Assembly (NCBI RefSeq): GCF_964204865.1
Contig: NC_135250.1
Location: forward strand, 27,714,001-27,778,000
DNA length: 64,000 nucleotides
Reading direction: 5' to 3'
Origin: Styela clava
Lineage: Eukaryota
The notes beneath the pieces are model-generated. The model worked only from the letters and a program-made list of their open reading frames with translations, was not told the origin of the DNA and searched no databases. The translations under genes and the position numbers were made by a program. Shown piece after piece: positions 9,914 to 60,030 of the stretch. Position 1 is the first letter of the stretch, and each line of letters opens with the position of its first letter.

Positions 9914-10279
9914 TTTGCAATTCAAATTTTAAAATGGATAGGATATTAAAACCTATATAATTTACATTTTAGCCAAACTATACAGAAAAAATAAGTTTTG
10001 AATCAAGTGTAAACATTTTTTTCTTAGTCCTGTAGACAGGAGTCAAAAATACGGTAACGAAGAGGACAATGAAACACAGCGGTTTTTATTGGTCTATGTT
10101 CAGTTTAAAATATGTTTGCCATCCGTAATTTTGAACTAGAATTTAGCATAGACAGTAAGCCACAGTTCTCTGATTCCAAGATGTCCCGGCATTTAGTTTA
10201 CTAAAACAATCACGGAGAAACAATCATCTCAGGAGATACCGTACCGGTACATGACTTGTGTCGTACCAGTAACATAAGG

Positions 10280-17842: not shown

Positions 17843-18759
17843 CAGGCCTGCCCAACCTTCTCAGTGGCGGGGACACTTTCACATGAAGAAATTCATTGCG
17901 GTCACAACGATTTACCAAACTCGAATACCAGCTGATTCACATCGGTTGCGCGTCCCTGAATTAAACGCTTGGATTGCACAACGCACTGGCTGATTTCAGA
18001 CGAGCACACGAGAACACACTTCCGTCAACTAAGACGTCAAAATTGAGTGTTATTTTTGCGTCATGATATTTTTTTTATCTAAATACTTCCAGGGACAATG
18101 ATACTGTTTCAACTTTTAATGAACGTGACGTGCGCTAATATCGCGTGAGTTTTGACAACTTTTTAGTTTTGTAAATTTCGAAACAATAATACAAGCACCT
18201 AATTAAGTAACTATGATTTCGTAGTGGATATATTAATTTGAATAAGTAGAAATGTTATTAGTCAATGCGGAATTTAACAGATACGCTGTGACGACATTTA
18301 AGAAGTTTTATATAACGAAAAAAAATAACATAGACACGATGGAAAAATACAAACAGAAAAAGAGACGGCGAATCCCAGATCCAGTAGCAAAGACTTTTTA
18401 TTTTACAGGGGCGATCAAATCGGACACGATGGATATTAATCAGAATAAATTAATTCGGCTGCTTTCGTCAGCCACTCGCCGCCAACTATCGTGAAATAGC
18501 TTTAGAATTTGCGGGCCTGCAAGAAATGAAACGAACTTTATCATCAATGTTCACCAGAACGCAAGACTTGATACGTGATAATAATAAGAAGACCCAACAA
18601 TTGGATGTAGATGGCCCGAACAGTAACACCAAAATCGCAAAACATATTTTAGATTGTAAAAAATACTAATAATTTAAAGTCTGCTTATAAACTCATTATA
18701 TAGCGGTCCGCAATAGACAGCTTGGCGTACCACATGCTGCCGACGGTTGGACAGCCTTG
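17843..18759. mobile_element. hAT-like MITE (old)
   Basis: Ends CAGGCCTGCCCAACC and GGTTGGACAGCCTTG. The 8-bp flanks ctcttggc and ctttaggt match only 5 of 8. Confidence 0.5.
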
Positions 18760-19034
18760 CTTTAGGTATTGTAAAGCAGCAAATACTCTCTTATTTGATC
18801 TATATCGTATAATAGAGGCTGACATTAAGAAACAGCATTTTTGAAGTATTTGTATGTATATTGCAGTAATGAATATATTTCTAAATGTAAACGTTAGAGA
18901 AGAGACTATAAGTATGCACACTTGATATAACACACTTTTGCAGTCATTTTAATTTAATAGCAGTAGGCTACTTTAATAATTGGCTACACTGTTTACATTT
19001 CTTTCAAAGTGGCGTCAACTGATGTTTCAGTCTC

Positions 19035-20274
19035 TTATTCGAAAGAAAACTCTTCCAAATCTTCGTCTGTAAAACCACTTTGTGGGTGCCATTGAGGTTG
19101 AAATCCTAAAAGAACAAGTTCAATCGTGAGATACATGTTCCACATTGATTGAGTTTATCAGTACTCCCGTAGTATGTGTACCAGGTTAGGGTTGGGCCTT
19201 AATTTTATTCCAATTTTCCCTATTTTAGTTCTATTACTAGTTCGGTGACTGTCTTGTGTTAGCCAAGTGAATATACCCCCTGCCCATAGGCTTCCGTCCC
19301 TTTACACAACTTGTGTGAAGTAGTCGAAAAAAATAAGTTACCTCCATATTGGTACACACACTCCTTGAGCGCCAGTTTAGCTAACTCAGGCATAAAATAC
19401 TTTACCGGTATAAGAAAGGATATATTTCATTCATGTGTATATATATTTATTCACAACAGCAATATTCCTCGTTTAGTTTTCATTTTCAATATTATGAATG
19501 CTTAATATCTTTTGTACGAGTATTTTTAAAAGAACAAGATGGGCACTCGCTACTCCGAGTTTTCCAATTGCAGACTCACAGTTATATAAAGTTCCTCTAT
19601 TAAAATAACTTACTAGTAAAATGTAGCAGTGGCTAAAACATGGTTCCAATTTAATTTGACTTAACAGTTTTGAAGTCTGACTAAATTACCGATACCTTGG
19701 AGTTCAAAATGATGTTTTCGGGGGTATAAATAATGTCTTCAACACCAGCTTGCAACAACAGATTTCAAATCTATATTTCTGGTCTAAATACCATTTAAAA
19801 CTTTTTTTAGCGAATGTTTTAAATTTCAATAAAAACGAAATATTCTCACTTTTTGTGCCCCATTTCATTGGACGAAAGAAAGTTGTGCGAACTATTCCGC
19901 CACGAATTGTTTCACGAGGTCTTTGAAATGTGTGTCTAAATGGTCGATAAGTTTCTGTTCTTTTGCTGAAAAATTAGAGAAATATAAAATACAGATACGG
20001 CAGAATGAATTAAATTAGCTCATTATTAGAAACCTCATTCTTTTCATCTTCAAAACGAAATGTGCTATTTTAAATTCACAGTTTTCACCGTGATTACGCC
20101 TTTGTTTTTTGAAAACATTAGAAAATAACTAAAATTTCGTATTTCGTGCAAATTAAAAATATATATGAAACCAATAGATATAAAAACTTAAGAGATGTCG
20201 ACCTACCTCCACCACGAAGTTGATGTTTGGATTAGAAGTCCAACAATGCAAATGAATAAAATCATTCCATGCAT
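19035..20274 (-). CDS. Secreted host-defence-like prepropeptide, copy A (84 aa, 3 exons)
   Basis: Exons 20207-20274, 19850-19965, 19035-19105; GT-AG introns in phase 2 and 1. Protein MHGMILFICIVGLLIQTSTS-WWSKRTETYRPFRHTFQRPRETIRGGIVRTTFFRPMKWGTKRFQPQWHPQSGFTDEDLEEFSFE*. TATAAAA about 40 nt upstream of the ATG. Confidence 0.82.
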
Positions 20275-20310
20275 TATTTGGGTTATAATCTAGTTAACAA
20301 AAGAAACCAC

Positions 20311-20317
20311 TTTTATA
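20311..20317 (-). promoter_or_regulatory. Putative TATA box of peptide gene A
   Basis: GCTTATAAAAG on the minus strand. Conserved at 23991-23997 (B), 43968-43974 (E) and 62596-62602 (F); altered in C and D. Confidence 0.6.
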
Positions 20318-21884
20318 AGCTAGTCGTACGGTGCTAAACAATAACATGAAAAATGCATTAGTTTTACCATTGTTTTAACTTCTCAATAATCACTTCTCAA
20401 TTCGCCATAATACTTCATTACTCGTCAACTTTCTCATTTTAAAGTATAAGAAACTAAATATTACTGACCACAACATATTGAATGCGTGCAACACCTCCGA
20501 ATGTCGATGTTTATTAAACATACTCGAACTTTGGGGGCAGGATGACCAAACTTTTTTTTTCCATGTTTTGGTTTCATCGCCTAATATCACGAAGTCTGCG
20601 ATACTTTTGTCTCAGTTTCGTTTGTTATGGAACGTTCTTCATCAATCATGTTGTGAATCGATACAAGCTCATCTCTGTCTTATGTTAGTTGAGAATAATA
20701 TTGAGTCATTTCACGCGCCGTCATTTTACAATATGAACTACATGAAAATTCTGATGTTTTTGTATTCATAAGCAAAGAGTATGACAGAGTCTATTTTTCT
20801 TTGTCGATATCAAAAGCAATGCAATAGTCATAAAACATTACACTTACATCGGCATGGCTTTGGTATCTTTCAAAAAACATCTAAAAACTTTAAAACCTAT
20901 CTTGTGCAAAAAAATATAAAAGACAGTATTCATATACTCCTTCAATCAACGATAGTTACAATCTATTATTCGTGATTGACATTATTTATAGTTTTTAAAG
21001 GGTGAAATGATTCTTTAGAACAGTTTTCAAACGTGCTCTATTTTTAGAACTTTTCAAGTCTCGCGCCCTACCTCGAAAATAACTAGATATTACTAGAATA
21101 ACAGCTGGTATGTCGAAAGTGTGGTTTATTCCAGAAAATACGTTGAAAATGCGTGGGTGGAACGTAAATATATATAAAATATCCAAAATAAGGTGGAAGA
21201 TCAAATCTAACAAATATTTTAATAATTTCACGCCCTTTCAAAAAATTGTTCACGCCCCTTTTTGGTTGGACGCGCCTCACCGTTTGAGAACCACTGCTTT
21301 AGAATGTCGGATTGTCATGTTGGAGAGGTGTTGAGGGAGTACTATGTACCAAGAAGCCATTGAGAGTGTTATATCAACCTTGTGTGACACTTGATTTATC
21401 TGGCGCTAACAGCGACATTTTAGGGTAAATATCGAATGATAATCTAGTCTTGTGGAACTATTTTTGTACAAAAATAAAAGCAATACTTCATGATGTTTGG
21501 AATATTTCATTGAATAATATTGACTATTGCATATGCTGAACAAACTATTCCGGTATTTTAGAAACACGTATGCGTATTTCAAGCAAGGTGTGAAATACCA
21601 ACGGTAATTCAGGTGTTCACAGAATCCAGTACTTTGAGATATCACATGATTGCATTGTGCCCGTTGCGGTGTAAGAGGGTCCGACGTTCCCAATTCCGGT
21701 GCAAAAAAAAACTCGTTTGATAACGAATTTCTATACAGAGACAAACTTCAGCGGATGAAGTCGGCAAATTACATTGTTTTGTTAACATGGTTGAGGTCCC
21801 TATCCTCGAAACGAATTTGCCCAGCTTTAGCTAAAATGAGATCTTCATGTGGCGGAGTCTTCATGTGTATTCAGTTTATTATAT

Positions 21885-22168
21885 TGTTACTTATCGATCT
21901 TTAGATCGGTAAGTATGTTGATAGGTGTTTGTTTGTCTGTTAGATGCACGCGATATCTCACGAACGCGTGGTTGATTCTGCTCCAAATTTTGCATGTGCA
22001 TTCATCATATCTCGGACCAGAAGCCTATTAATTTTGGATTTATTAATTATGTCGTATAATTAGCGAGTTATTAATTAATTAGTGATGGGACACGCGGTGT
22101 CACTATAGAGTCATGAATCGAAACCGCAGTTTCGATCGATAAGTCTTCAGTCTCCGACCGATATTCTT
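21885..22168 (+). mobile_element. Helentron-associated (DINE-1/HINE-like) element
   Basis: Subterminal inverted repeat ACTTATCGATC (21889) and GATCGATAAGT (22134), GTTT/GTCT microsatellite near the 5' end, T-rich flanks. It interrupts a block that is contiguous in the paralog near 25590. Confidence 0.6.
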
Positions 22169-22468
22169 TTCTAAGTATTATCAAGTTACCGTATTTGATC
22201 AGTTTTTGGTGACCTGACTAATTTTCATTCCATTCCTTGGCATTGTAATTAAGTAACTTCTCTTCTGATTTGGTATTTATGCAATTTGCATTTGAATAAC
22301 GAATGTTTCAGTAATGAATGTAATTCCATATTAAACGTTACACAGAGAAGAGACTAAGAATACACAAATGCATAAGAAACACGCACTAGCATTTTGTGTG
22401 TCAACAAAAATCTACTTCAATTTGGATACCAGGTCATTTTGAGTGGCTGCAATTAGTGTTTTAGCTTC

Positions 22469-23932
22469 TTATTCGAATAAAAAATCTTCCAAATCTTCGT
22501 CTGCAGAATCACCTTGGACGTCCCACCTAGATAGGAATCCTGTGTATACAAACGTCAATCGTGAGATACATGTTCTACATTGACTGTCTTTTGCCAACTA
22601 GCTCCGGCCCGAAACACTTTGACAATATGAACATAACATTCCATAGGGGTATATAAATAATGACTATATTAATATTTCTAAGTTCGTTTCTCTATGGGTT
22701 TTCGACTTTATAAATAATGTTTTCCATGAGTATTTTCAAAAGCACAAGATCTATCGAGATGTGCACTCGCTACTTCGACTCCAGATTACTAGGTGATATA
22801 TATGTAACACTGCCTCAATCTCGTAGCTAAAATTATTTATCACTGCACATTAATCCCGTGAAAAGCATTGTTTCAATTTGATTCAACTTCGAAGTTAAAC
22901 ATCTGACTAAACAAATCTGTTCCGCCCCGCACCCTACATCAGGGGAATAAAATTGATACTTTATGAAAATATAAATAAAGACTTTAACACCAGCTAGCAA
23001 CAGACTCTAAATCCAATGTCTGTTAAGAATAGAAAATTGGAATTTTTTTGAGCGACTGTTGTCAATTATCACATTTAACGGATTGTTCTTACCCTTTACA
23101 TCCCATTTCCATGAATGGTAATTGGTTGTCTTTACCCCCCATTTACTTGGACGGAAATAGGTTGTTCTGGAAAAAAAAAAACGGTATGAAATACAGATAT
23201 GGTTCGTTTGTAGAATACATAATTAAGTCTGTCGTGGACAGTGTCGTCTTTACCATTGACCTAGAGGCATCTAGCTCTCTCAATTGTAAAGGTTTCTTCC
23301 AGAATGAAGCCGGTATAAAATGTTACAAAACTGATATTTGTTTAATGTTTTGGGCGGGTTATTATATTTTGTCCCAAATTTTTTAGCGTCCAAAAGATTA
23401 AAACAGAATACGACCGAATCAATAAATTTGTCCAGTTTTAAAAATCGCTACCTCTTCAATCTTGATAACGTAATATGCTATTTTAAAATACCAGTTTACC
23501 GTAATAATGCCATTACGTTTTTGAAAAAAAGAGAAAATATCTCAGCAACAACGAATCTAATACTTGATATATTTATTACTAGTTCGTATCGGTAGACGTA
23601 TTTCATGCAAGTTAAAATAAATTCAATACGTCATATGCAAGAAATGTATATGATGAAGTCACAAGGGTTTCATGACGTCAATATTACTCGAGTTACAAAG
23701 ACTGATTTCTCTGACTGATTTGCGTTTTCATTGTAAGCCACAGTTGAATAATTACAAAAGCTTTCAACCGTTACTAACAAAAATTAGGAAATACATGGAT
23801 TCGACAAAAATATTAAAACTTTAAATACTGTCCTCATAACCCCGATAAGATATCGACCTACCTATACCATGCCGAAGTTGATGTTTGGATTAGAAGTTCA
23901 ACAATGCAAATGAGTAAAATCATTCTATTCAT
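22469..23932 (-). CDS. Secreted host-defence-like prepropeptide, copy B (71 aa, 3 exons)
   Basis: Exons 23862-23932, 23093-23166, 22469-22539; phases conserved. Protein MNRMILLICIVELLIQTSTSA-WYRTTYFRPSKWGVKTTNYHSWKWDVKGFLSRWDVQGDSADEDLEDFLFE*. A Glu in the signal h-region may weaken secretion. Confidence 0.8.
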
Positions 23933-30007: not shown

Positions 30008-30125
30008 CTGCGCTTCGCTTCGTTCTCTTACCCCATTTCGTCCTCTTGCTGCGGTTCATGTTGCGGACAAATTTTCGAGCTTGTCGATACTAACTGACGA
30101 TGATATGCCAGTTTATGGAGAAATC
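30008..30125 (-). pseudogene. Orphan remnant of the X1-type cytoplasmic-tail exon
   Basis: After a tgttttAG acceptor it reads (R)FLHKLAYHRQLVSTSSKICPQHEPQQEDEMG*, homologous to X1 RFYHKLANYRQLLSTTSKMSLDSEPRQEKE. Its flank 29290-30005 matches the X1 3' flank 44730-45465. Confidence 0.7.
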
Positions 30126-43909: not shown

Positions 43910-45757
43910 TATGTAGATTATGATCTATAAGTTCTTGCAAAAGAATCCACAACTGATTTATCTATACTTTTATAAGCTAGACGTAAGTCGCTAAACAAGA
44001 ACATGAAAAATTACAATAGTTTTACTACTGCTTTTACCAATTTAATTATTTATTTAATATTTTATAAATATTCATTTATTATTATTATTATTTGTTTATT
44101 TAATTTATCAATTTTTTGGTAATGATAATTTAGGTGACTTGATGATGATAAACTATCTTCCACTGATATATGGGCGCTGTTTGAGCGATGATTCAAAGCA
44201 AGGTGGAAATTTTAAAGGCAATTAAGAGGTCTTGATGATGATAAACCATTTTCCACTGACATATGGGCGCTGGTGGATCGCGCCTTCGTCGTATTTGTAC
44301 GTAATTTGTAGGCATTTATACTCAATTTTTATTAGATGATAGTAATTGATGGATCAAAATTTGGTGTGTATTGGATATGCTATCGTCATATAATTTTTTC
44401 GCTATTTAATAGCAACAATGATGCAGTTTAATAAAGGGGAACAACAACATCGTATTTTCATATCATAGCAGCTCGCTGCGTATTCCAAGCAAGATGGGAA
44501 ATACCAATGATTATTAAGTTGACTTAATGGTGATAAATCATTTTCCACTGACATATGGTGCCTGATTCGAAGCAATGAGGGAAATATCAATGGTATTTTG
44601 GGTGACTTAATGACGATAAAACATTTTCAACTGACATATGGACGCTGATTCGAAGCAAGGTGGGAAATATCAATGGTATTTTGGGTGACTTAATGATGAT
44701 AAAACATTTTCAACTGACATATGGGCGCCTGTTGATCGCGTCATCGTCGTATTTGTAGGCATTTTTACTTCATTTTTTATTAGAATATTTTCGATAGAAT
44801 ATAATTTGGATTGAATATTCTACGGGCAATGCTTACAATATGTTTTTTTCTCTATTTAACAACAAGGGTGGCATGCAATATAATGAAGAGTTACAACAGC
44901 ACATATTCTTCAATAAAATACGATAATCACAAAAGAGCTTCACCCAAAAACAGTTCAAATTTGAATATTTGTTATGGCCATAACCAGCCATTATATGATT
45001 AATCAGTCACTTGAGCAAATATGATGAATCATGCTGTTCATTCACTTTGTGATTATGACATATTTCTGCGTCACAATTTGCGTTAATAAGTGATTGTACA
45101 AGAATTACTCTGAAAATTGGAATCATTCCCAGAATAAGTTTCTTTAAAGGTTCATATGGAAACCGATCCTTGAACAAAAGAAAACTCATTTATACGTCAC
45201 TTACATGCAAATATAATATACAAATATAAGTACAAATAATAAGCAAATATAAGTACAAATTAAAGTCTAACTATGTATAAAAAATATTTAGGAAAAAAAT
45301 AGTGTTACATTCAAAAGTTTTTGAAAATTTAGTTTGAAAAGATTTTGTGAAATATGAAAAACGCGTATACATCGGTTGGGCTAAATATTAAGATGCACGC
45401 TTCTCGTTTTCCGTAGTTGTATTGGTAAATTAAAGTGTTTTTGAGATAGGATGAATGCTATTGAATGATAAAATACAGTATATATAAGTCACTTATATAA
45501 CACGCGAAAAGAAAACCTAGATATATGTACAATAGTGTTCAAAGAATAAAATAATAATTTGATAAAAGAAAACAGTGTAACAGATCAAAGTCTTCAGCAT
45601 TCTGTAAATTGATAAAATTTGCTGTTACGCTAGGAACACTATATATTATAAGCCCGTTTTGTGTTGTCCGAAGTAATAATCAAACCTGAGGGTTTTGAGA
45701 CAAAATGAATGTATCTACATATTATAAAGCACGTTGTCTATCATTTCTCTTTCCGAC

Positions 45758-48509
45758 TCAGCGTTTTTTTGAAGTTTTTTCGTTTTTGTTTACCACGCTA
45801 TACATATCTTCAATGTTTTCGGAGTTGTTTGATTCCTGGGCCTCGTCGTTCTCTTGCTGCAATTCGTTTTCTTGCTGCACTTCGTTCTCTTGCTGCGCTT
45901 CCTTCTCTTGCCGCGGTTCAGAATCCAGAGACATTTTTGAGGTTGTAGACAATAATTGACGATAGTTTGCCAGTTTGTGATAAAATCTGAAACACATATG
46001 ACAGAGATAACAAAGAGCTTAGATAAGAACGAGTTGTACTACTGTTTGGACTTCAATATTTGGCTTGAAAGGGGTTCAAAAGTGGGAACTGAACTATACT
46101 TTCTACCATTTATAAAAGGGTCATTTACCAAGTTACTACAATTTCCTTAAAAGAATTCAGCCCTACATGTAAAAACTTGAGACTGAAACCATGCAGAATT
46201 GATAAAAAATCAAGAATTGCAGATTACCTCAATGTTAGGGTGATTATGAGAAGTACTGCTAAACCAAGCAAGACTGCCGGAACAATTATCAAAATTGATT
46301 TATCCTTTGTATTACAGTTTCCATCATAACCATTGGAATCCCTCATTGTTGCCGTAATCGGAATTGAGGTTATATCACTCTGTGTATTGTTTATCAAATA
46401 ACCAGATTGAGTTGCCGTCGGTTCATTCTCTGAATATGTTTTGTGATAGTTAGATGTGGTGGGAACGCTATTCCTTTCCGTAGTTTGTTGAAGTTCTACA
46501 AATAGGTACAGTTCACTTATTATTGGCGGGAACCCTCTTTAAATTCAAGCGTATATATCAAAAATCGCCCCTCAATTAAAGATTTTTATAAGAAATTATG
46601 GTATCAAATATTTGAAAATTTTCATTTGAAAAGTGCGTTTGTTTCGTTAAAACTAAAATTACATTCCCTAATGTATAAGAGATTATTGACTAGTTGAGTA
46701 CAGTGTGCTAATGTACTGTATATTTAAAATAATGTATATACTGTACTATTCTACAGAATTAGCCTATTATAATATCGTTGCAGCTCAGCAAGCATACAAA
46801 TTACTTCATTAAGTAATATTAGGTTTACACTTTTTGCAGTTATAATATTTTCTCCTTAAGATTACTGCAGAATATAATACGAAGAATTTAAGTTGAAGAG
46901 ACTTATTAAATTCGCTTATACTTAATTTGTTGCTTTTACCTGTGTTGTTTAATATCCGGTGTATTAACAGGATTTTGAATTCTTGAAGTTCATGAGAGTA
47001 ACCATCCCCTGTCTTATATGTCAAACTAATTGGAAAAACATTATCTTCAATATTATGCTGGTATATTCCATTACATCCGTCAGTAATAGATTTATCAGAT
47101 ACAGCTTTTGAGGCGAAAAGGAAACAGTCGTTGAGTTTGGAATCACACAGTTCTGTATCCACTAATCCAGCTAAAACATAGTGATCAATTGATGCCTTTA
47201 CCTGATAGTACATGTAATACCCACTATAATTTACCATATACGGCACTAATGTGAGTATCGGGTCCTAATTTCAAATATTATATCCGATATATTGGTTACC
47301 TACGTAGAGATCTCGGCAAAAAACAGCACAACTGAGACATTTGTAATTCTTAATTAACGCAACAGGAAATCATAAAGACAACTATCAAACTACTAAAAAC
47401 TAGATAATATGCAACGTATAACACATAAACATGTTTCGAGTGAAATAACCCCATGGTGGAATAAAAAAACTAGAACACAAATTAATCGAAACAAGCCTTG
47501 AAGGTGGATACAAAACTATATTTTTATAATTAATAGAAGTTTTTTAATTGTTACAAATTAACACGAAAAATGTATTCACTTTGATTGCCAGTAATTTTCA
47601 GAGATCCAATGCACTGACTGTTTTGATAGAGTTTATTTTCAGTAATATTAACTAACAAGGCGGTGTTAACAGATATGCAACTATCGGCTTTTAATTCCCA
47701 AATAGTGTGAATATCCCCTGTTCTTCTGAAAAATACAAATTGAAAATAACTATTTAAACTATATTTTCATGTTCATATACGGCTGGTTGATCATGAAATT
47801 TCATTTCATCATTTTTAAAAGTTTATCAAAAAAAAATTTTCCTATATTTTACATCGTTCTGTTAATTATTATTCATGTTAAAATTATTTTTTATTGGATT
47901 ATATATATGCTTTATTTGTATCAATTTTCATTAAAACCTAATAAAAAATAGAGAAATGTTTTACCTTACACTTGAGCCTTGTTCAGGTTTAGAACATAAA
48001 TCAAGGTTAAACTGACTCAGAACGATAGATTGGCAAAATGTTGCTGACACTATAAGTGAACAAAAAAGAATATTTGTTGCGTTGAATATTTTTCATAAAG
48101 TCATAAATCCGCTCTAGGGGTGAGTTTCAAATACTCGATAATATTATTGTAGATAACTTCGTTAAGTATACGTACCGTACATTTATTTGCAGTGCAAGTG
48201 TCAATTATCTCACTTATTACTAATTAGTTACGTACTTGTTAATAAAAGTCAAGTTATGAAACGTTGAAGTCCTGAATTTCTAAAAGACTCAAACCCTCGA
48301 TGGATTTCTAGAATTCATATGACTCACTCTAAAAAGTTTCGGAAATATTCAAATTTGAATGAGGCATTTTAACTCAACAAATTCATTCCCTATACGTAGT
48401 GAAGTAAACAACACATATCCACTTATATACAGTTTGAGAGTCACTGATGAAAAATGATACGAACAAATTACTCACCTATAAGTAACAATACCCGCGCAAG
48501 TAAATACAT
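45758..48509 (-). CDS. Type I membrane protein X1 (330 aa): signal peptide, CUB-like ectodomain, Ser/Thr-rich stalk, TM, acidic tail with Tyr motifs
   Basis: Exons 48476-48509, 47965-48049, 47580-47725, 46940-47170, 46228-46495, 45758-45986 total 993 nt in frame with GT-AG sites. Starts MYLLARVLLLIVSATFC-QSIV; TM ILIIVPAVLLGLAVLLIITLTL; tail has QQENE repeats, NYRQL and IEDMYSVVNK. The CUB call is pattern-based only. Confidence 0.8.
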
Positions 48510-48527
48510 GTTTTTCAAATATTTCAG

Positions 48528-48588
48528 CTCGTCTCTTGCAACTACGTCTCTTGCAACCCGTCTCTTGCAGCCCGTCTCTTGCAACTAC
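48528..48588 (+). repeat. Four ~14-bp tandem repeats (CGTCTCTTGCAAC) just upstream of the X1 ATG
   Basis: Four copies in X1 versus a single copy at the equivalent X2 position near 55224. Confidence 0.8.
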
Positions 48589-48957
48589 ACCGAAGAACTT
48601 ATATGGTAATCCCAAGGTATCAATTTGAAAACGTAAATGTCGGGCAAGGCAACAGTTGTTACGTTGCATTCATCAGAGTACCCATGTATCTATACTCTTT
48701 ATTACGTGTACTAAAGCGATGAATTTTACTTGCCAAATGCAGATTAGTAATTGTAAAGTACGCTCTATGTTGATTGGTAATATGTCGAATCACTTCCTCG
48801 TGCACAAACGATCACCTTCAACAGTTTACTAAGGTTCGTTATTTGAAATCATGATCTGACTAATGTAATTCAATGATTGAGATCGAATCTTCCAACAAAA
48901 TTTTGAATTGGAAGTATTGCTCATTTAGTTCCTGAACGCTTTGGATATTTTTAATTT

Positions 48958-49160
48958 GGTTCCATTACACTTGAACCCACGTAAATTTGAACCCATGACA
49001 ATTGCACCTGTATGCTATTGCACCTATGGAATTTTTTTTGTTTCACGGATAGTTAAACCCATACTAACCCTAACCCATGGGTTTTAGCACCCGCATATAG
49101 ATTGAACCCGTGGATATACGCATGGGTTCAAATGTACATGGGTTCAAATGTACGGTCACC
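48958..49160. mobile_element. MULE-like MITE upstream of X1
   Basis: GG...CC ends with repeated TTGAACCCA motifs. 9-bp TSD TTTTAATTT at 48949-48957 and 49161-49169. The empty site is visible upstream of X2 near 55600. Confidence 0.85.
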
Positions 49161-51410
49161 TTTTAATTTACTTAGATTACTCTCCACGAATTATGTACTT
49201 TAAAAGTGAAGTGGTCAAATCATGAACAATTCTATGTATATATAATGAGAGAGCGATCCAATATATGGATACGCAGTGATATTGGTCAGAGCTGCCATAC
49301 CGGCACTATATCGCAGCTGAGCACAATATTTTAATTGCAAAAGCGGAACCACCACAAGTAGGTCAATTTTTAATTTTTATGACGTCATCGCACAAAAAAG
49401 GAATCTCATAAAGGCATACACATATTTTTGATATAAAAAAATATAATCGACTTCTAGATAAAAACACAATCTCTAACCACTGAAAATCTCAAAGCTATTG
49501 GTCTAGTAATTAAAGGGAAAGACGTTTTTTCACAAAAAGAAGAAGAAAAGAAAACCTAACATGATGATTATCAAGTACAACAATACAATGATAAAACGAT
49601 CCCTATGTACACTTTAACCAGGACCAACCAATCAACAAGAGAGAGCAATGATCAAATATATGGACGCAAAGGTCATGCATCGGCACCAGTACGGTTAGTC
49701 TTGAGTTAAGCAGCACATTTACAGCAACGAATGTAGAGTTCCAGTAAATAACTGGAGTAATCCTCTCCTGAAAAATATTTCCACTTTCATGTCCCCAAGA
49801 TTTGAAATCGATTGGTGTATTAGTTTTGTTCACAACAATTTCAGGTGTAAATATTTCTTACAATTTGTTTCAGTCTTGATTCTGCATTTTAATTTGGGTG
49901 CGTATCGACCGACGCATATATTTGATAATTATTTTTTTATCTTATTCAATGTTTTCAAACGCAAGTATTTCGGAGTTTTCTGTATTGAACTATTTTCAAT
50001 GCTATACGAATTCCTTTTCCATTTGCAGATTTTTCCATTTCTTAAAAAAGGAACATTGGTAAACTTGTGTTTGCTTAATAAGAATATGACCATTGGTTTA
50101 ACGTCTAGGACAAAATCCCGAGGTAAAAATCGTTAGCAAACGATCTTTCTCTGCAGGTGTGATCTTGTTTCAACTTTGGAAGCCTAATCATTCACGCCGA
50201 CAAAAATTATAGTTGTACATCTAAGAACATACCTACAGATACATTAGTTAAATGATAATGATTTTTGCCATAAACTAACACTAATATATTTTAACATTTT
50301 TTTTGATCCGTACAGTTATACCTTGTCTCGTTTTTTAATTAAATTCTATCTAAAAGAATAGCATATTTAAGCAGAATTTCACAAATGACATATTATTGAA
50401 TGTTCACGGAGATCACTAAATAGCCGTTTTAATTGTACTGCATGCGTGTGATACCTAAAGATATAAATATCCTTTTTATAACCTGAAATTTTGCACCTCA
50501 ATTTCCTCGTCAAATTTATCAGAAACCGAAACCATGATAACAAAATACTTTAACGTAAATTGAGAAGTCACGCGAGAATATTAAACGATCCATTGCATCC
50601 TGTTTGTTGCACTCTTGAATTTCTCATCACAAATTTCTATTGATACAATTTATCCCTTAATAAATTATGTCCATGCTTTCTAATAATTGTTTGTTATAAA
50701 GTTGTTCTTTAGATTTCCATAAATTTTATTTCAGATCTGGAAGAAAAAGGACGTTATGCCACACTATTATTCCAGGTTGAATATAAATATCGCTTTGCAA
50801 CTTGAATGTTTTCCACATTTATAATTGAGTCAGTATTCGATCCTGCAAACCCACAAGATTCCAGATCGCTAATACATATTTTCAATAGTTGTCGCATACA
50901 AGCATTTAATTAATATGCGATTAGCAATAATCTAAATGTTATAGTTTGATATTACATCTAAGATTAGAATTTATATTTTATTTTTTCAATATCTACTTCA
51001 TATAGATGAATTTATTTATAAAAAAAAAAAAATTTAAATTAAATTGAAAATGTATACAGTTTTTTTGTAACTTATTTAAAAAAGAAATTATTTAAGCCAA
51101 AACTCGTTTTTTCTACAGATATATCAAATATATATTGATAAAATACACGAAAGAGTACATGGAACATCTAAATAGTGTTTGAAATACGTCTTGAGAAAAA
51201 AAAAAAAATAAGAAGTCTTAACCCAGGTCGCTAAAGTTATCTGTTAAATATATGTATGATTATTTTGTATTTCTATATATACTCTATTATAGCAAGATCT
51301 GATTTTTTAATCAGGAGTGACTATACCCAATCATGTCTAGTTACAACCAGTCAATAACATGAAGAAGAATTGAAATTAATGTTTAACAAATAAACAGGAA
51401 TAAGGTAAAG

Positions 51411-54400
51411 TCAATATTCAATATCATGATACGGGTGAAAATTTGTCGGTTCGTATCCAGATGATTCGTCAGGTTGTTGCAATGAATCACTCGTCAAGAA
51501 TTTAATCTGATGTCTTGGATCGGGATGAGAGGTCATTGCAGAATGCTCGTGACAAATAGGCAATTCGTATCCACAAGTTTCAGTAGAGCTGGTTGTCTTT
51601 GATTGTTTAATAGTGTTGTTTTCGTAGATTTCGTGTTCACATCCAAACTGAGCTTTTGATATATTTTTCATACTTGGTTTCTCATTATTCCGGATAGCAG
51701 TTGTATTTCTGTTGTTTTTCAACCTAAAATAAAAATAAAGTGTAGATTTTCAAACTTTGGTAGTATCTCAAATTCTTGCAGGTCTAACTATTTTGGCGCC
51801 TAAGCCAGGGTCGGCCAACCTTTTTAGCCGACGGGCCACATTTAGTTTACTAATAATTGCGCGGGCCACTTAACATGGTAATTATTTTCCAGTTTTGCTA
51901 CACTGACTAAAAGTTAATGAAAGAGCATAGAAAACCCTCGCATCAAACTTTCTCAATAATAAGAACAATAAAAAAAACGAAGATACTGTAAAGTCAACAA
52001 AGGTATTTCTACGCGTAGATATTTTGGTGTGAAGTTTGAAAAAATTTCAATATTCGCTGAAATGAACGATGTAGCAATGTGAAGCCAATTTTTCCTATGA
52101 CTGTCAGAAATTAGTGATTTCACAGGGGATTCAAAGCGTAAAGGCAATCCAAAGTTGTCAACTCATCAATATTTTGCTTCATTGCCAAAACATCAAGGAT
52201 TTTATGCATGCACATACCACGCCTAAACACACAGCATTGGCAATTATCATTTATGCCCCCAGCAGGTTTGACCAAGTAATATTTGGTTGGTGCTACATTT
52301 GAACGAGAGACCACGTGATAAAATAAAAGAAGATTGTCTCACAGATGAGATAACGTTAAAGAAGTAGTAGAAGACCCAAGTGTGTAAGCGACTATTTAAG
52401 TATCGATATCTTCCAGTTGGTTTCGATTCCAAATGGTACTCATCGCTCGTTTGAAAGGGCTAGCAGAGCGCATTTCAGGATCATGAACAAATTTTTTGTA
52501 TCAAATCTTTATATTAACTACATCACTTGAAAATTAGAAATTTTTCCCATTTTTTTTTATTTATTTTCGAAAATACAGCGCAGGCCACTCGAAACTCCCC
52601 GGTGGGCCACATGTGGCCCGCGGGCTAAGGTTTGGACGATCCTGGACGAAGCCTTGTAGATACAACAGTGATGACAACATTTCGACAATGCTAACGAAAG
52701 CAAATTCGACAATTAATGAATTTAATGTTTCTTGATTATGATTTTGACCTACTTCTACCGATCCCCGATGTCGTACTAACGACTCAACCACTTTTGAATC
52801 AGCTAAAAATAATACCTCTCTAACACAGTTTATATTATTCAAAATAGAAAATCCATTTTTTTAAAACTGCTTTGTTGATATGTGATACGAATACCCATAT
52901 GGACATCTGAAAGCCGGCAGATTCCGAGAGTTTCCAGATTTGAAAACAATAGATAATAAATTGGATGCTAGCTCTTTTAAATCAATGCCCTTGTCTATGC
53001 AATGTTTATTCAACATCCAATAGTTATTTTAATCTTACCTGGTAACAAGGACAATAATGATGATCACTGCAATAACGAGAAGAATGCCAAGTACAATAGT
53101 GGAGATGACGATGATTTTCCCAGTTTCTTTGCCAAAGTCGTCACTACTTGTACTTGATTTTGTTATTTTCTTAACTCCAGTTTGTTCAAACGACGAAGTT
53201 GTTGCTTTATTTGTGAGCAGGTCCCAGTTGCCTTCAGTAGTTGCATTTTTATCATTTTTAAAATCTGCAAAGTTTATATAATTCACCATATTTGAACAAT
53301 AACATTCATTACAACATTCTCAATTCTGATATTGACGGCATTAAAGTTTAGGAGATAAAATTCACACGAATTTTAATTTTGTTCTATTTAATTTTTTTCT
53401 TAAAATATTTCGTCGATTTTAGTAAAGCCTAAAAATTTGTTTGTCATTTTGTTTATATTATACAAAAGCAATAACTAAGTCGTGCTAATGAATGATGGCT
53501 CAAAAGGCCATAACTATTCAGTTCGGTCTAAATTAGAATAAATTCCTTGTTTATCATTGGCTCATTCGTTTTACCTTTGCTGCTTGTTTTTACATAAATT
53601 GAGGGAATGCGAAAATCTTGGAAATGATCATAGAAACCATCCTCTGTCTTATAAGTAATATTTATTGTAAATATATTGCCTTCAATGATGATATAAGGAA
53701 ATATTCTTGCACATCCGTCAGTAATAGAATCATTAGATACATTTTTGAAGTAAAAATGAAACAGTCGTTTGGTTGGGAATCACGAAGTTCTGTGCTAATT
53801 TGATAAAAAAATTGCTATTTGCTGTACGGAGCATTTTATATAGATAGATTGATAAAAATTGAATACAATAGGGAGAACTTAAGTTGAAAGAGACTAATTA
53901 TATCTGCTTTTACCCGTGTTGTTTAATATCCGGTGTATTAACTGGATTTTGAATTTTTGAAATTCATGAGTGTAACCATCTCCTGTCTTATATGTCAAAT
54001 TAATTGGAAAAACATTATCTCCAATGATATGCTGGTGTATCCTATTACATCCGTCAGTAATAGATTCATCCGATACGGTTTTTGAGGCGAAAAGGAAACA
54101 GTCGTTGAGATTGGAATCACACAGTTCTGTATCCACTAATCCGGCTGAAACATATTGAAATTGGTTCTTTTACATGATAATGCATGATATTACCTCCCAT
54201 AAATTACCATATACGGTATTGTATATTAAATAAAAGTTGTTTAATTGTTACAAATAAACACAAAAAATGTATTCACTTTGATTACCAGTAATTTTCAGAG
54301 ATCCAATGCACTGAGTGTTTTGATTGAGATTATTTTCAATAATTTTAACTATCAAGACGCTGTTAACAGATGTGCAACTATCGGTATTTAATTCCCAAAT

Positions 54401-55200
54401 AGTGTGAATATCCGCTGCTCTTCTGAAAAATACAATTTAAAAATGACTATTTAAACTATATTTTCATGTTCATATACGGCTGGATGATCATGAAACTTCA
54501 TTTCATCATTTTTAAAAAGTTTATCAAAATCAGAATTTTCTTATATTTTACATCATTCTGTTGATTATTATTCATGTTGAAATTATTTTTCATTGTATTG
54601 GATGCTTTATTTGTATCAATTTTTTTTTAATTTAATCAAAGGATATAGAAATGTTTACCTTACACTTGCTCGAAGTTCGGGTTTGGAACAAGAATCAACA
54701 TTAAACTGACCCAGACCGATAGCTTGGTGAAGTATTGCTGTCACTATCGGTGAACAAAAATGAAGATTAGTTACGTTGAAAATTTTTCCCGGAACTGACA
54801 AGCCGTAAATCCGTTTTGAGGGGTTTGAGTTTCGAATACGCGATATATAATATTAAAGATGACTTCGTTAAGTATATGTACAATTATATGCATTTCAAAA
54901 GTCAACTATCTCACTTAGTACTAATTAGTTAGATCCTCGTTAAAAAAAGGCAAGTTATAAAACGTTGAAGTCCCGAATTTCTAAAAGACTAAACCCTCGA
55001 TGAATTTCTATAATTCATATCACTCACTCGTAAAAGTTTTGGAATTATATAAATTTGAAAGAACTCAACGAATTTATTCCTTGTACGTAGTGAAGTAAAC
55101 AACATCTATCCACTGATATACATTATTGAAAATCCCTAATAAAAACGATATGAACAAATTACTCACCGATAAGTGACAATAACCGCGCGAAGAGATGCAT
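51411..55200 (-). CDS. Type I membrane protein X2 (344 aa): same CUB-like ectodomain, different stalk/TM/tail
   Basis: Exons 55167-55200, 54659-54743, 54277-54422, 53914-54144, 53039-53264, 51411-51723 total 1035 nt in frame. Exons 1-4 have the same lengths as in X1 (34/85/146/231). TM IIVISTIVLGILLVIAVIIIIVLV; tail has IYEN, GYELP, GYEPT, PYHDI and a terminal Y. Confidence 0.8.
51806..52644. mobile_element. hAT-like MITE in the last intron of X2
   Basis: Ends CAGGGTCGGCCAA and TTGGACGATCCTG. TSD gcctaagc/gacgaagc (6 of 8). The empty site gcctgagc is in X3 near 58818. Confidence 0.75.
53575..53800 (-). pseudogene. Diverged tandem duplicate of receptor exon 4 (exon 4') inside X2 intron 4
   Basis: Reads TELRDSQPNDCFIFTSK / VSNDSITDGCARIFPYIIIEGNIFTINITYKTEDGFYDHFQDFRIPSIYVKTSSK with a phase-1 GT donor and a 1-nt frameshift in an A-run. 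The counterpart in X3 is at about 59705-59905. Confidence 0.65.
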
Positions 55201-55875
55201 GTTTTCTCAAATATGTCAGCTCCCGTCCTTTGCAACTACACCGAAGAACTATATGGTTATCCCAAGGTATAAAATTTGAAAACGTGAAACTTTGCCAAGC
55301 CAACAGTTGTTAACGCATGCGTTCATCAGAGTATTTATGTATCTACTCTTTTATTACGTGTACTGAAGCGATGAATATGTCTTGCCAAATGCAGATACGT
55401 AATTGTAAAGTACGCTTTTTGTTAATCGGCAATGTGTGATATCATTTCCTTGTGCACAGACGATCACCTGCAACAGTTTACTAAGGTTGTTAATTTGTAA
55501 TCAGGATCTGACTAATGTAATTCAATGATTGAGATCGAATCTTCCGAACAAAATTTTGAATTGGAAATATTGCTAATTTAGTTCCTGAACACTTAGGATA
55601 TTTTTAATTTACTCAGATTACTCTTCACCCATTATGTATTTTGAAAGTGAATTGGCCAAATTATGAACAATGCTATGAAACAAGAGAGCGATGGTCAAAT
55701 ATATGGTCACGAAATTGTACGGGTATGCAATTTGTCACATTTCGGCACGGTATTGCAGTTGAGCACAAATTTTAACTTACGCAAAGGTGAAACCACCACA
55801 ACGAGCGCAATTTTTAATTTCGATGACGTCATTGCACACAAAAAAACAAATCTCTTAGAGGCCACACATATTTTT
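54230..55875 (+). repeat. Segmental duplication of ~47535-49430 (exons 1-3 and upstream region of X1 and X2)
   Basis: Collinear introns, exons and 5' flank. Confidence 0.85.
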
Positions 55876-58427: not shown

Positions 58428-60030
58428 TCAATATTCAATATCATGATACGGGTGAAAATTTGTCGGTTCTTATCCAGATGATCCATCTAGTTGTTGCAAT
58501 GAATCGCTCGTCAAGTATTTAATCTGATCTCTTGGATCGGGATGAGAAGTCATTGCAGAATGCTCGAGACGAATAGGCAATTCGTATCCAGAGGTTGCGG
58601 TTTGTATTGCTATTTGTATTTCACCGTTCACGACGTTGTTCTCATATATTCCGAGATCACATTCAAACTGAGCTTTTGGCATATTTTTCATACTCGGTTT
58701 CATATTCTTCGGGGTAGTAGTTGTATTCCTGTTGTTTTTCATTCTAAAATTAAAAAAAAATGTATGCATTTTCAAGCTTCGGTAGTATCTCAATTTCTTG
58801 CAGGTAGCTATTACGGCGCCTGAGCCTTGGAGATACAACGCTGATGCAAATATTTAAAATATGCACACGGAAGCAAAATAGACAAGAAAGGAATTTGATG
58901 TCTTTTGATACTTGGAATGATTTTGACCCACTGCTACCGATCCCTGTCGTCGTACTAACAACTCAACTATTTTCAAATCAGCCTAAGATAATTAGTCTTC
59001 AACACAGTTGATATTGATCAAAACAGAAAATACAATTTTTAAAACTGCTATGCCGATATGTAATACCAATCATCATATGGGCATCAGAAAGCGGGCAGAG
59101 TCCGAGAAATGTCCATGTTTGTGCAATGTTTATTCAGCATCCAATAGGTATTTGAATCTTACCTGGTAACAAGGACAATAATGATGATCACTGCAACAAC
59201 GAGAAAAATGCCAAGTACAATAGTGGAGATGAAGAAGAATTTCTCATTTTCTTTGCAAAAGTCGTCACTACTTGTAGTTGGTTTTGTTATTTTCTCAACT
59301 CCAGTTTGTTCAAACGACGCAGTTGTGGCTTCATTTGTGAGCAGGTGCCTGTTGCCTTCAGTAGTTGTATTTTTATCATCTTGATGAGCTTAAAATTTCT
59401 ATAATTCACTATATTTAAATAACAACAATCATTACAACATTCACAATTCCAATATTGACAGCATTAACGTTTATGAAATAAAAACCACACGACATTCAAT
59501 TTTAATTTTGTTCTAATTAATTGTTTTTCTAAAATATGTCGGAATTTAATATAGCTCAAAAATGTGCCAAGTTATTTTGTTTATATTGTATAAAAGCAAT
59601 AACTAGGTCTTGCTAATGAATGACCGCTCATAAGATCATAACTATGCAGTTCGATCCAAATTACAATAAATTCCAAATTTATCATTGGCGTATTTGTTTT
59701 AACTTTGTTGCTTGTTTTCGCATAAATTGAGCAAATGCAAAATGATCATAGAAACCATCCGCTGTCCCATAAGTTATATTTATTGTAAATATATTGCCTT
59801 CGATGATATCCTAGCACGTCCATTGGTAATAGAATCATTACATTTATTTTTTGAAGTAAAAAGGAAACAGTTGTTTGTTTGGGAATCACAAAATTCTGTG
59901 CTGATTGAATAAGCATTTTGTACAAATAAATTGATAAACATTGAATACAATACGAAGAACTTAAGTCGAACGAGACTAATTTCTTTTGCATATACCTAAT
60001 TTGTTGCTTTTACCCGTGTTGTTAAATATC
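58428..60030 (-). pseudogene. Receptor X3, 5'-truncated paralog of X2
   Basis: Retains only the last ~18 nt of exon 4 (60014-60030), the stalk/TM exon (about 59163-59389) and the tail exon (58428-58743). The GYEPT Tyr codon has become TAA at 58470-58472. Exons 1-3 are absent. Confidence 0.72.

What the first reader, a model, noticed from the sequence alone, without database searches (positions are those of the whole stretch)
45758..55200. Paired-receptor-like gene pair: shared CUB-like ectodomain, unrelated stalk, TM and signalling tails
Seen: X1 and X2 have exons 1-4 of identical length with six conserved ectodomain Cys, but exons 5-6 do not align. The X1 tail is acidic with NYRQL and MYSVV. 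The X2 tail has IYEN, GYELP, GYEPT and PYHDI. In exon 4, a hand count gives 12 amino-acid-changing versus 4 silent-only codon differences. Established: pYxN binds the Grb2 SH2 domain, pYxxP binds Crk/Nck/Abl-type SH2 domains, and immune paired receptors couple similar ectodomains to opposing tails. Inference: an undescribed invertebrate-chordate paired recognition receptor system (immunity or allorecognition) created by exon shuffling.
Basis: partly seen in the sequence, partly recalled or inferred. Interest (0 to 1): 0.8.

Follow-up and report, generated by a model that had tools for sequence, protein, structure and literature searches.

The report
Sea-squirt CUB-like receptors, two tails
The two genes are neighbouring members of a tandem array of about 25 unstudied surface-receptor genes in the sea squirt Styela clava, which join one CUB-like outer domain to either of two unrelated tyrosine-bearing tails; the layout recalls paired immune receptors, but no such function is shown.

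Summary
X1 (45758-48509) and X2 (51411-55200) are six-exon minus-strand genes. Exons 1-4 have equal lengths and about 82% DNA identity, introns and promoter included. Their stalk, membrane and tail exons are unrelated.

They are not a pair. They are two of at least 21 copies in a 190-kb array in Styela clava, with about 10 tail-A and 11-13 tail-B genes. X1's nearest relative is another A gene, not X2.

Two AlphaFold models of family members match CUB domains best (Z 8.3-9.8 and 7.1-8.7), but Pfam CUB does not match.

RNA contigs confirm three X1-type junctions.

Every B gene carries a decayed second exon 4, a recombination scar. One old event joined the shared 5' module to the B 3' module.

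The hallmarks of paired receptors are absent: neither tail has an ITIM, ITSM or ITAM, and neither membrane helix has a charged residue. X1's tail is cut short by a frameshift. X2's expression is unproven. Selection looks relaxed or mixed (dN/dS 0.5-1.25).

The function is unknown; my best guess is recognition receptors with phosphotyrosine scaffold tails. Earlier follow-ups of this scan found the same family on adjacent DNA and on other chromosomes.

The parts
45758..48509 (-). X1, a class-A gene (LOC144425764). Exons: 48476-48509, 47965-48049, 47580 or 47589-47725, 46940-47170, 46228-46495, 45758-45986. Layout: signal peptide, CUB-like domain (exons 2-4), Ser/Thr-rich stalk and membrane helix (exon 5), acidic Gln/Glu-repeat tail with YRQL and MYSVV (exon 6).
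   Evidence: Splice sites and frames. Identical to database protein P0001 = XP_077971537.1. RNA-contig joints at 45986|46228, 46495|46940 and 47170|47589.
45715..45759 (-). Out-of-frame relic of the ancestral A-tail end (ESEREMIDNVLYNM, then stop). It overlaps X1's stop codon (45758-45760). One extra A in an A7 run truncates X1 before this tyrosine motif.
   Evidence: The intact form is seen in g03, g10, g14 and in P0002, P0008 and P0017.
51411..55200 (-). X2, a class-B gene. Exons: 55167-55200, 54659-54743, 54277 or 54286-54422, 53914-54144, 53039-53264, 51411-51723. Same head module as X1, but a different stalk, membrane helix and 103-aa tail with IYENN, GYELP, (F)LTS, GYEPT, PYHDI and a C-terminal EY.
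   Evidence: The reading frame is intact. Only one 100-nt RNA contig lies on exon 6. No protein for it is in the collections searched.
53580..53806 (-). Exon 4b: a decayed second copy of exon 4 inside X2's intron 4. It has a frameshift and no AG acceptor, and marks the recombination that joined the head module to the B tail module.
   Evidence: The 12 exon-4b copies in the tree form their own clade, nearest the native exon 4 of the divergent B gene P0014.
46870..48957 (-). Shared 5' module in X1: about 450 nt of promoter, exons 1-4, introns 1-3 and the first 70 nt of intron 4. Its counterpart in X2 is 53861-55610.
   Evidence: BLASTN 82-84% identity. Intron identity 0.83-0.89.
53861..55610 (-). 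Shared 5' module in X2, the counterpart of 46870-48957.
58431..60030 (-). X3: a class-B pseudogene truncated at its 5' end. It keeps a tail exon with TAA at a tyrosine codon, exon 5, broken exon-4b pieces and the last bases of exon 4a; exons 1-3 are missing.
30010..30123 (-). Isolated relic of a class-A tail exon (53% identity, with a stop) beyond the low-coordinate edge of the array.

Best explanation
X1 and X2 are adjacent members of a tandem multigene array in Styela clava (C1:27.76-27.95 Mb). The array has at least 21 copies with a full exon 4, plus broken copies. A divergent sub-cluster lies at 27.585-27.62 Mb and a distant one on another chromosome. A relative also exists in at least one other organism.

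Shown:
- Each gene encodes a type I membrane protein: signal peptide, one very divergent CUB-like beta-sandwich with six Cys, a Ser/Thr/Asn-rich stalk, one membrane helix, and one of two unrelated cytoplasmic tails.
- Tail A has a juxtamembrane YRQL, a variable (QQENE)n acidic repeat and MYSVV. Its ancestral form also ends in VLYNM.
- Tail B has six conserved Tyr: IYENN, GYELP, KYLTS, EYEPT, PYHDI and a terminal EY.
- The B genes of this array are chimeras. One old unequal recombination joined the head module (promoter to exon 4, plus about 55-70 nt of intron 4) to a B-type gene just upstream of its own exon 4. That exon survives in every B gene as a decaying exon without a splice acceptor.
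- The array then grew by duplication, including a large segmental duplication. Head modules were exchanged between classes, and many copies decayed.

Inferred mechanism:
- The CUB-like domain binds an extracellular protein or glycan ligand.
- B-type receptors act as phosphotyrosine scaffolds. Src-type kinases would phosphorylate the conserved Tyr, and SH2 adaptors would dock there, for example Grb2-type at YENN and Crk/Nck/RasGAP/PLC-gamma-type at YELP.
- A-type receptors see the same class of ligand but route differently. Their YxxPhi motifs suit AP-2 endocytosis, or they recruit another partner set.

The structural and evolutionary part is well supported. The signalling part is inference from motifs.
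For: - Gene models. X1 equals XP_077971537.1.
- Splicing: RNA contigs 94-96% identical to X1 join 45986|46228, 46495|46940 and 47170|47589.
- Array size and the two tail classes.
- CUB-like fold: the AF2 model of X1 has pLDDT 65-88 in the ectodomain. In an all-against-representatives structure search, 21 of its 22 best hits are CUB domains (the other is a SID1-family ectodomain), at Z 8.3-9.8 and rmsd 2.4-3.8 A over 102-115 residues. A second model, of the divergent B member P0014, gives CUB domains as its top 21 hits at Z 7.1-8.7. Foldseek and language-model leads agree weakly.
- Chimera origin: homology between X1 and X2 stops 53-70 nt into intron 4. Exon-4b copies lack an AG acceptor and carry frameshifts or stops. 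Exon 4a of A and B genes forms one clade (100/100). Exon 4b forms a separate clade (100/99), nearest the native exon 4 of P0014.
- Tail constraint: all six B-tail Tyr are kept in a 45%-identical member, and the C-terminal four in a 46%-identical one. B-tail dN/dS is 0.47, the lowest of all exons.
- The A-tail motifs YSV[VI] and LYN[ML] are kept in about 25%-identical paralogs on chromosome C6.
Against: - No Pfam, PDB-sequence or other sequence-level match to CUB or to any family.
- The models rest on 11-12 sequences, and Z 8-10 is only modestly above the stated background of 7-8.
- dN/dS is about 0.9-1.05 in exons 2-3 and 1.25 in the B stalk exon. Together with many pseudogenes, this fits relaxed constraint as well as diversifying selection.
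- The high B-tail identity partly reflects youth: dS is 0.12, against 0.36 for A tails.
- Only three of nine A tails keep both Tyr motifs, and X1 is truncated.
- X2 has Phe at the third Tyr site, and its expression is unproven.
- Expression is low: depth 1-7 in two of the four RNA runs and none in the other two.
- There is no evidence on cell type, ligand or phosphorylation.
Confidence: 0.7

Rival explanations
1. This is a true paired activating/inhibitory recognition system. A-type and B-type receptors bind the same polymorphic or pathogen ligand and give opposing signals in blood cells, serving immunity or allorecognition.
For: - Clustered genes share one ectodomain and have two conserved alternative tails.
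- Variable positions are concentrated at a few ectodomain sites, including alternating residues 154 and 156 of the last strand.
- 13 of 15 differences between RNA contigs from other animals and X1 change the amino acid.
- From my own knowledge: Styela species reject allografts, so an unknown recognition system exists.
Against: - Neither tail has an ITIM, ITSM or ITAM, and neither membrane helix has a charged residue.
- A and B neighbours are not ectodomain-matched pairs.
- dN/dS does not exceed 1 overall.
- Many copies are broken.
- The expression site is unknown.
- The RNA-contig differences often equal paralog states, so they may come from paralogs rather than alleles.
Confidence: 0.15
2. 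This is a mostly decaying birth-and-death array. A few members may work, but X1 (truncated tail) and X2 (unannotated, Tyr-to-Phe change) are drifting copies, and the two-tail pattern is only inherited history without paired function.
For: - Frameshifts or stops occur in many exon 4, A-tail and B-tail copies.
- dN/dS is near 1 in exons 2-3 and in the B stalk.
- Only 2 of about 21 main-array genes have proteins in the collections.
- RNA depth is very low.
Against: - X1 and X2 keep complete open frames and splice sites across six exons.
- Spliced A-type transcripts exist.
- Tail tyrosines are conserved across 45%-identical and about 25%-identical relatives.
Confidence: 0.2
3. These are gamete or cell-adhesion recognition molecules rather than immune receptors, by analogy with the single-CUB spermadhesins.
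For: - Spermadhesin is among the best structural matches (Z 8.6 and 8.4).
- Rapid evolution and tandem expansion are typical of reproductive proteins.
Against: - There is no expression data.
- Spermadhesins are secreted and have no signalling tails.
- The structural match is to CUB domains in general, not to spermadhesins in particular.
Confidence: 0.08
4. Exons 4a and 4b are mutually exclusive alternative exons that give each B gene two ectodomain variants.
For: - Exon 4 is symmetric (231 nt, phase 1-1), and all B genes carry two copies.
- An earlier scan note proposed this reading.
Against: - None of the 12 main-array exon-4b copies listed has an AG acceptor.
- Most have frameshifts or stops, X2's among them.
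- The RefSeq B model P0006 skips exon 4b.
Confidence: 0.04

Closest known systems
CUB domains (Pfam PF00431; e.g. Kremen1, cubilin, neuropilin a1/a2, TSG-6 CUB_C, MASP/C1s CUB2, spermadhesins)
   Same: The predicted beta-sandwich superposes on solved CUB domains (Z up to 9.8, rmsd 2.4-3.0 A over 102-113 residues). The Cys spacings of 26 and 20 residues resemble the two CUB disulfides.
   Different: There is no sequence-profile match and only 5-19% identity. The domain is about 140 residues rather than about 110, and it has a third Cys pair. The Ca2+ site was not assessed.
Vertebrate paired immune receptor clusters (KIR, LILR, Ly49, SIRP, NITR)
   Same: They are tandem arrays with near-identical ectodomains joined to alternative cytoplasmic ends. 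They evolve by birth and death with recombination between members, and include many pseudogenes.
   Different: The fold is different (CUB-like, not Ig or C-type lectin). There is no ITIM, ITSM or ITAM and no charged membrane-helix residue. Both classes have long tails. Opposing signalling is not shown.
DCBLD1/DCBLD2 and CDCP1 scaffold receptors
   Same: These are single-pass receptors with CUB-type ectodomains whose tails carry several Tyr. Src/Abl kinases phosphorylate them so that SH2 adaptors such as CRKL can dock at YxxP (PMC6029619).
   Different: There is no LCCL or discoidin domain and only one CUB-like domain. X2 has one YxxP, against seven or more in the DCBLD proteins. There is no detectable homology, and these genes form a multigene array rather than single genes.
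Transmembrane adaptor proteins (LAT, SIT, NTAL)
   Same: The tail is disordered, with spaced Tyr motifs including YxN. One family member gives a sub-threshold Pfam SIT hit (E 0.009).
   Different: Those adaptors have almost no ectodomain. The hit is far below the family cut-off.

Membership tests
CUB domain (PF00431) | Significant match to the Pfam CUB profile | tested here: not met
   No CUB hit at E <= 10, either for each exon translation or for 12 full-length family proteins. A profile search of PDB sequences found no CUB protein.
CUB domain (PF00431) | Ten-stranded jelly-roll beta-sandwich that superposes on solved CUB domains | tested here: met
   Tested on predicted models only. In model 1, 21 of the top 22 hits are CUB domains, at Z 8.3-9.8. 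In model 2, the top 21 hits are all CUB domains, at Z 7.1-8.7.
CUB domain (PF00431) | Four conserved Cys forming the C1-C2 and C3-C4 disulfides | tested here: inconclusive
   Six conserved Cys at P0001 positions 30, 56, 78, 98, 105 and 123. The spacings 30-56 and 78-98 fit the CUB pairs, and 105-123 would be an extra pair. Bonding could not be read from the model output.
CUB domain (PF00431) | Ca2+-binding acidic cluster (present in many CUB domains, not all) | not tested
   No residue-level structural alignment was available.
Paired activating/inhibitory immune receptors | Clustered genes with closely similar ectodomains | tested here: met
   X1 and X2 share 84% amino-acid identity in exon 4 and 73% in exon 3. 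Across the array, exon 4 is 70-84% identical to X1's.
Paired activating/inhibitory immune receptors | Inhibitory member carries an ITIM ([ILVS]xYxx[ILV]) or ITSM | tested here: not met
   A pattern scan of both tails found none.
Paired activating/inhibitory immune receptors | Activating member has a short tail and a charged membrane-helix residue for an ITAM adaptor, or its own ITAM | tested here: not met
   Both membrane helices are uncharged. The tails are 75 and 103 aa and contain no ITAM.
Paired activating/inhibitory immune receptors | Opposing signals, and expression in immune cells | not testable with these tools
   This needs cell-type expression data and biochemistry.
DCBLD/CDCP1-type scaffold receptors | Multiple YxxP or Src-site tyrosines in the tail, with CUB plus LCCL/discoidin ectodomains | tested here: not met
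   X2 has one YxxP and X1 has none. No further ectodomain domains were found. There is no sequence similarity.

The most novel reading that the evidence does not exclude
The array is the polymorphic recognition locus of a solitary ascidian, the long-sought receptor basis of Styela allograft rejection or of blood-cell non-self reactions. In this reading, A and B tails give different outputs, so it would be a paired-receptor system that evolved independently on a CUB-like fold in the sister group of the vertebrates.
Probability: 0.15. Interest if true: 0.85.

Novelty: new variant of a known kind. Interest (0 to 1): 0.55.

Why it matters

This large, fast-turning-over array of surface receptors is built on a different fold. 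Two alternative conserved tyrosine tails are swapped by recombination, much as in the KIR, LILR and Ly49 clusters. If it works in recognition, it would be a case of convergent evolution. It would also give concrete candidate genes for allograft rejection and non-self reactions in solitary ascidians, whose receptors are unknown.

Even without that role, the exon-4b scar is a clean, datable example of a new receptor class being made by exon shuffling.

Tried and rejected
- Pfam scans found nothing beyond noise from membrane helices and low-complexity sequence, both on the ten exon translations and on 12 full-length proteins.
- A profile search of PDB sequences matched only membrane-helix segments.
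- The ESM Atlas gave CUB clusters at only 0.81-0.85, which are leads and not evidence.
- Exons were searched one by one. The full-length protein I folded was the database entry P0001, returned by the exon-4 profile search and identical to the X1 model. X2 could therefore not be folded or looked up as a whole protein.
- The single read-laying run covered 45740-51739. X2's exons 1-5 and its junctions were therefore not tested against RNA.
- I rejected the 'matched pair' reading because of the tree.
- I rejected mutually exclusive exon 4a/4b splicing because exon 4b has no acceptor site and carries frameshifts.
- I rejected ITIM and ITAM readings of the tails.
- A claim of positive selection on exon 3 from X1 against X2 alone (13 replacement to 1 silent) is not significant by my hand estimate (one-sided binomial p about 0.18, given the site counts). 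Across the family, exon 3 has pN/pS 1.05.
- Literature searches found no paper on these genes.
Full report
**1. What is in the sequence**

The window is AT-rich eukaryotic DNA. Database look-ups place it in Styela clava, chromosome-scale contig C1:27,714,001-27,778,000. Both genes lie on the minus strand.

I rebuilt the models by hand from splice sites and reading frames:
- X1: 48476-48509, 47965-48049, 47580-47725, 46940-47170, 46228-46495, 45758-45986.
- X2: 55167-55200, 54659-54743, 54277-54422, 53914-54144, 53039-53264, 51411-51723.

All borders are AG/GT. Exons 1-4 are 34, 85, 146 and 231 nt in both genes. The frames close at 330 and 344 codons.

BLASTN shows 82-84% identity over 46870-48957 against 53861-55610. 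That stretch covers about 450 nt upstream of the ATG, exons 1-4, introns 1-3 and the first 53-70 nt of intron 4. Nothing further downstream aligns. The six ectodomain Cys and all quoted tail motifs are present. Exon 4 has 12 replacement and 3 silent-only codon differences.

**2. Transcript evidence**

The X1 model is identical to RefSeq XP_077971537.1, 'uncharacterized protein LOC144425764'.

I laid contigs from four probable RNA runs of the species on 45740-51739. Two runs from one study gave joints at exactly 45986|46228 and 46495|46940, and a further joint at 47170|47589. These contigs are 94-96% identical to X1.

Of their 15 coding differences, 13 change the amino acid, and several equal the state found in paralogs. 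They may therefore be alleles or very close paralogs. Either way they prove that class-A transcripts are spliced as modelled.

- 20 of 21 array members have GT at that upstream site.
- The downstream GT is lost in five members.
- In two members, reading on to the downstream site would meet an in-frame TAA.
- X1 alone has GC at the upstream site.

The family's exon 3 is therefore 137 nt. X1 uses either a GC-AG intron or the downstream GT.

For X2, only one 100-nt contig (94% identical) lies on exon 6. No X2 protein is in the collections searched. Its expression remains open. Depth was 1-7 in two runs and zero in the other two, so expression is low or tissue-restricted.

**3. Not a pair but an array**

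I searched the species' genome exon by exon.
- Exon 4 has at least 21 full copies (70-84% amino-acid identity), all on the minus strand, at C1:27.76-27.95 Mb.
- There are also five or six divergent copies (42-55%), most of them at 27.585-27.62 Mb, and weak matches on C6.
- X1-type exons 5 and 6 (class A) occur about 10-12 times. X2-type exons (class B) occur about 14 times. The two classes are interleaved.

Mapping all exons on 244 kb gave 9-10 A genes, 11-13 B genes and several broken ones. The broken set includes a third, 5'-truncated B pseudogene in this window at 58431-60030.

In a tree of the contiguous exon 3-intron 3-exon 4 DNA, A and B genes are interspersed, with at least four changes of class. 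X1's nearest relative is g20, another A gene (93% identity). X2 is not its sister. Three near-identical gene pairs about 111-114 kb apart point to a large segmental duplication.

A second cluster of a distant subfamily lies on C6:18.19-18.51 Mb.

A profile of exon 4 searched against 1.84 billion representative proteins found 12 hits (E up to 0.001). Of the seven I looked up, six are S. clava proteins and one, the 211-aa P0004, comes from a public read assembly. An eighth, P0008, is named as S. clava. I did not examine the other four, which are weak hits to long proteins. P0004 is not encoded in this genome (best match 42% identity). The family therefore exists in at least one other organism.

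**4. How the two classes arose**

Every B gene of the main array carries a second, degenerate exon-4 copy (exon 4b) between exon 4 and exon 5. No A gene has one. None of these copies has an AG acceptor, and most have frameshifts or stops. X2's copy, at about 53580-53806, is frameshifted.

In an exon-4 tree:
- All exon-4a copies, from A and B genes alike, form one clade (support 100/100).
- The 12 exon-4b copies in the tree form another clade (100/99).
- The nearest relative of exon 4b is the native exon 4 of P0014 (LOC120326597), the divergent B gene at the far end of the array.

The X1/X2 homology ends a few tens of bases upstream of exon 4b. Together these facts indicate one unequal recombination. 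It joined a head module (promoter to exon 4a, plus the start of intron 4) to a B-type gene just 5' of that gene's own exon 4. The old exon lost its acceptor and has been decaying since.

The event predates the expansion of B genes in this array. It did not create the X1/X2 pair specifically. Both tail classes also occur in the divergent sub-cluster, and A-like tails occur on C6, so the two tails are old.

Synonymous divergence differs strongly between exons: exon 3 is 0.11, exon 4 is 0.23, exon 2 is 0.28, the A 3' exons are 0.35-0.37 and the B 3' exons are 0.09-0.12. That is the signature of a mosaic history with exchange between copies.

**5. The protein**

No exon or full-length protein matches any Pfam family or PDB sequence, apart from noise from the membrane helix.

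AlphaFold2 on P0001, with a 12-sequence family alignment, gave:
- a signal helix;
- a ten-strand all-beta domain at residues 22-163, with pLDDT 65-88;
- a disordered stalk;
- a membrane helix at about residues 232-256;
- a low-confidence tail.

In an exhaustive structural comparison with 48,161 PDB representatives, 21 of the 22 best matches are CUB domains: Kremen1, cubilin, Gpr126, TSG-6 CUB_C, neuropilins, MASP-1, C1s, MAP-1, TMPRSS6, enteropeptidase, spermadhesin and meteorin. The other is a SID1-family ectodomain. Z is 8.3-9.8 and rmsd 2.4-3.8 A over 102-115 residues.

Foldseek gave only weak hits (E about 4e-4), to PliG, TSG-6 CUB_C and the C-terminal domain of Clostridium perfringens enterotoxin.

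A second, weaker model (pLDDT 50-77), of the 27%-identical B member P0014, again put CUB domains in ranks 1-21, at Z 7.1-8.7. Other folds scored 7.0 or less. The two models share most of their alignment, so they are not independent.

The Cys spacings 30-56 and 78-98 fit the two CUB disulfides, and 105-123 would be an extra pair. I call the domain CUB-like by predicted fold. Membership by sequence was tested and not met.

**6. Tails**

Neither tail contains an ITIM, ITSM, ITAM, YxxM or NPxY motif, and neither membrane helix has a charged residue.

Tail B:
- X2 has IYENN (YxN), GYELP (YxxP), GYEPT, PYHDI (YxxI) and a terminal EY.
- The third family tyrosine (KYLTS) is Phe in X2.
- All six Tyr are kept in the 45%-identical P0014-type tail. 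The C-terminal block QYL(T/M)..SLQQPD.SS.YEPTNF..Y.DIEY is kept in a 46%-identical tail.
- B-tail dN/dS is 0.47, the lowest of all exons.

Tail A:
- It has a conserved juxtamembrane YRQL, an 18-nt-period Gln/Glu repeat of variable length, and MYSVV.
- The ancestral form continues to ...VDNVLYNM. This end is kept in the sub-cluster proteins, and as VYSVI...ELYNL in the about 25%-identical C6 paralogs.
- In X1, one extra A in an A7 run stops the frame 16 codons early. The lost end can still be read out of frame at 45715-45759.
- Only three of nine A genes keep both motifs.

**7. Selection**

X1 against X2:
- Exon 3: 13 replacement and 1 silent difference (ratio 3.6, not significant).
- Exon 4: 12 replacement and 6 silent substitutions (ratio 0.50).
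- Exons 1-4 together: ratio 0.79.

Family-wide pooled pN/pS:

| Exon | pN/pS |
|---|---|
| Exon 2 | 0.89 |
| Exon 3 | 1.05 |
| Exon 4 | 0.64 |
| A exon 5 | 0.68 |
| A exon 6 | 0.65 |
| B exon 5 | 1.25 |
| B exon 6 | 0.47 |

Variable positions cluster at residues 34-37, 42, 47, 125-126, 130, 150, 154 and 156. This pattern fits a mixture of constraint and diversification, but it fits relaxed constraint in a birth-and-death array equally well. Positive selection is not shown.

**8. Reading**

Shown:
- The genes form a lineage-restricted, tandemly expanded family of type I membrane proteins.
- They have a CUB-like ectodomain and two alternative tail modules joined by recombination.
- Class-A transcripts are spliced as modelled.

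Inferred:
- B-type members act as phosphotyrosine scaffold receptors. In working principle they are closest to DCBLD1/2, whose tail tyrosines are phosphorylated by Src/Abl-family kinases and then bound by CRKL at YxxP (PMC6029619), and, from my own knowledge, to CDCP1.
- A-type members couple the same kind of ectodomain to YxxPhi-type sorting or to another partner set.

The resemblance to vertebrate paired-receptor clusters lies in genomic architecture: shared ectodomain, alternative tails, birth and death, and recombination. The defining signalling marks were tested and are absent. An immune, allorecognition or gamete role is a guess.

**9. Earlier notes of this scan**

Follow-up reports on adjacent DNA and on other chromosomes of this genome describe the same family and reach similar conclusions.

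This report adds:
- the RNA-contig junctions;
- the corrected exon-3 donor;
- the phylogenetic proof that exon 4b is a recombination scar rather than an alternative exon;
- the frameshift truncation of X1's tail;
- the heterogeneous dS between exons;
- a relative outside this genome.

**10. Limits**

- Only one reads call was available, so X2's junctions are untested.

Noticed in passing
window 48958-49160: A repeat of about 200 bp with inverted 'GGGTTCAAATGTA'-type ends is inserted in X1's upstream region. It is absent from the matching place in X2. RNA-run contigs cover it at summed depths of 5,000-23,000, so it is a very abundant, transcribed MITE- or SINE-like element.
   Followed up: partly
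window 48530-48585: Four tandem copies of a 14-nt unit (CGTCTCTTGCAACC) lie 21-76 nt upstream of X1's ATG. X2 has a single copy at the matching place. This may be a variable promoter or 5'UTR element.
   Followed up: partly
window 51824-52628: An insertion of about 800 bp in X2's intron 5 is bounded by 18-nt inverted repeats (TTAGCCGACGGGCCACAT / ATGTGGCCCGCGGGCTAA). It looks like a MITE or small DNA transposon.
   Followed up: partly
window 58431-60030: A third family member: a class-B pseudogene without exons 1-3, with TAA replacing the Tyr codon of the GYEPT motif.
   Followed up: yes
window 30010-30123: A lone relic of a class-A tail exon (53% identity, with a stop) lies 15 kb beyond X1. 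It suggests the array once extended further.
   Followed up: partly
window 45846-45911: An 18-nt tandem repeat (3.7 copies) encodes the (QQENEx)n acidic repeat of the A tail. Copy number differs between paralogs, giving tails of 60-101 aa.
   Followed up: yes
G000:C1:27.798-27.813 Mb and 27.909-27.927 Mb (loci L033-L034 and L044-L045): Three consecutive genes (g04, g05, g07) have near-identical counterparts (g16, g17, g19) about 111-114 kb away. This indicates a recent segmental duplication of a multi-gene block within the array.
   Followed up: partly
window 22469-22539: An earlier first-stage note places a styelin-like antimicrobial-peptide feature here. I did not examine it, but it gave the first hint of the organism.
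   Followed up: no
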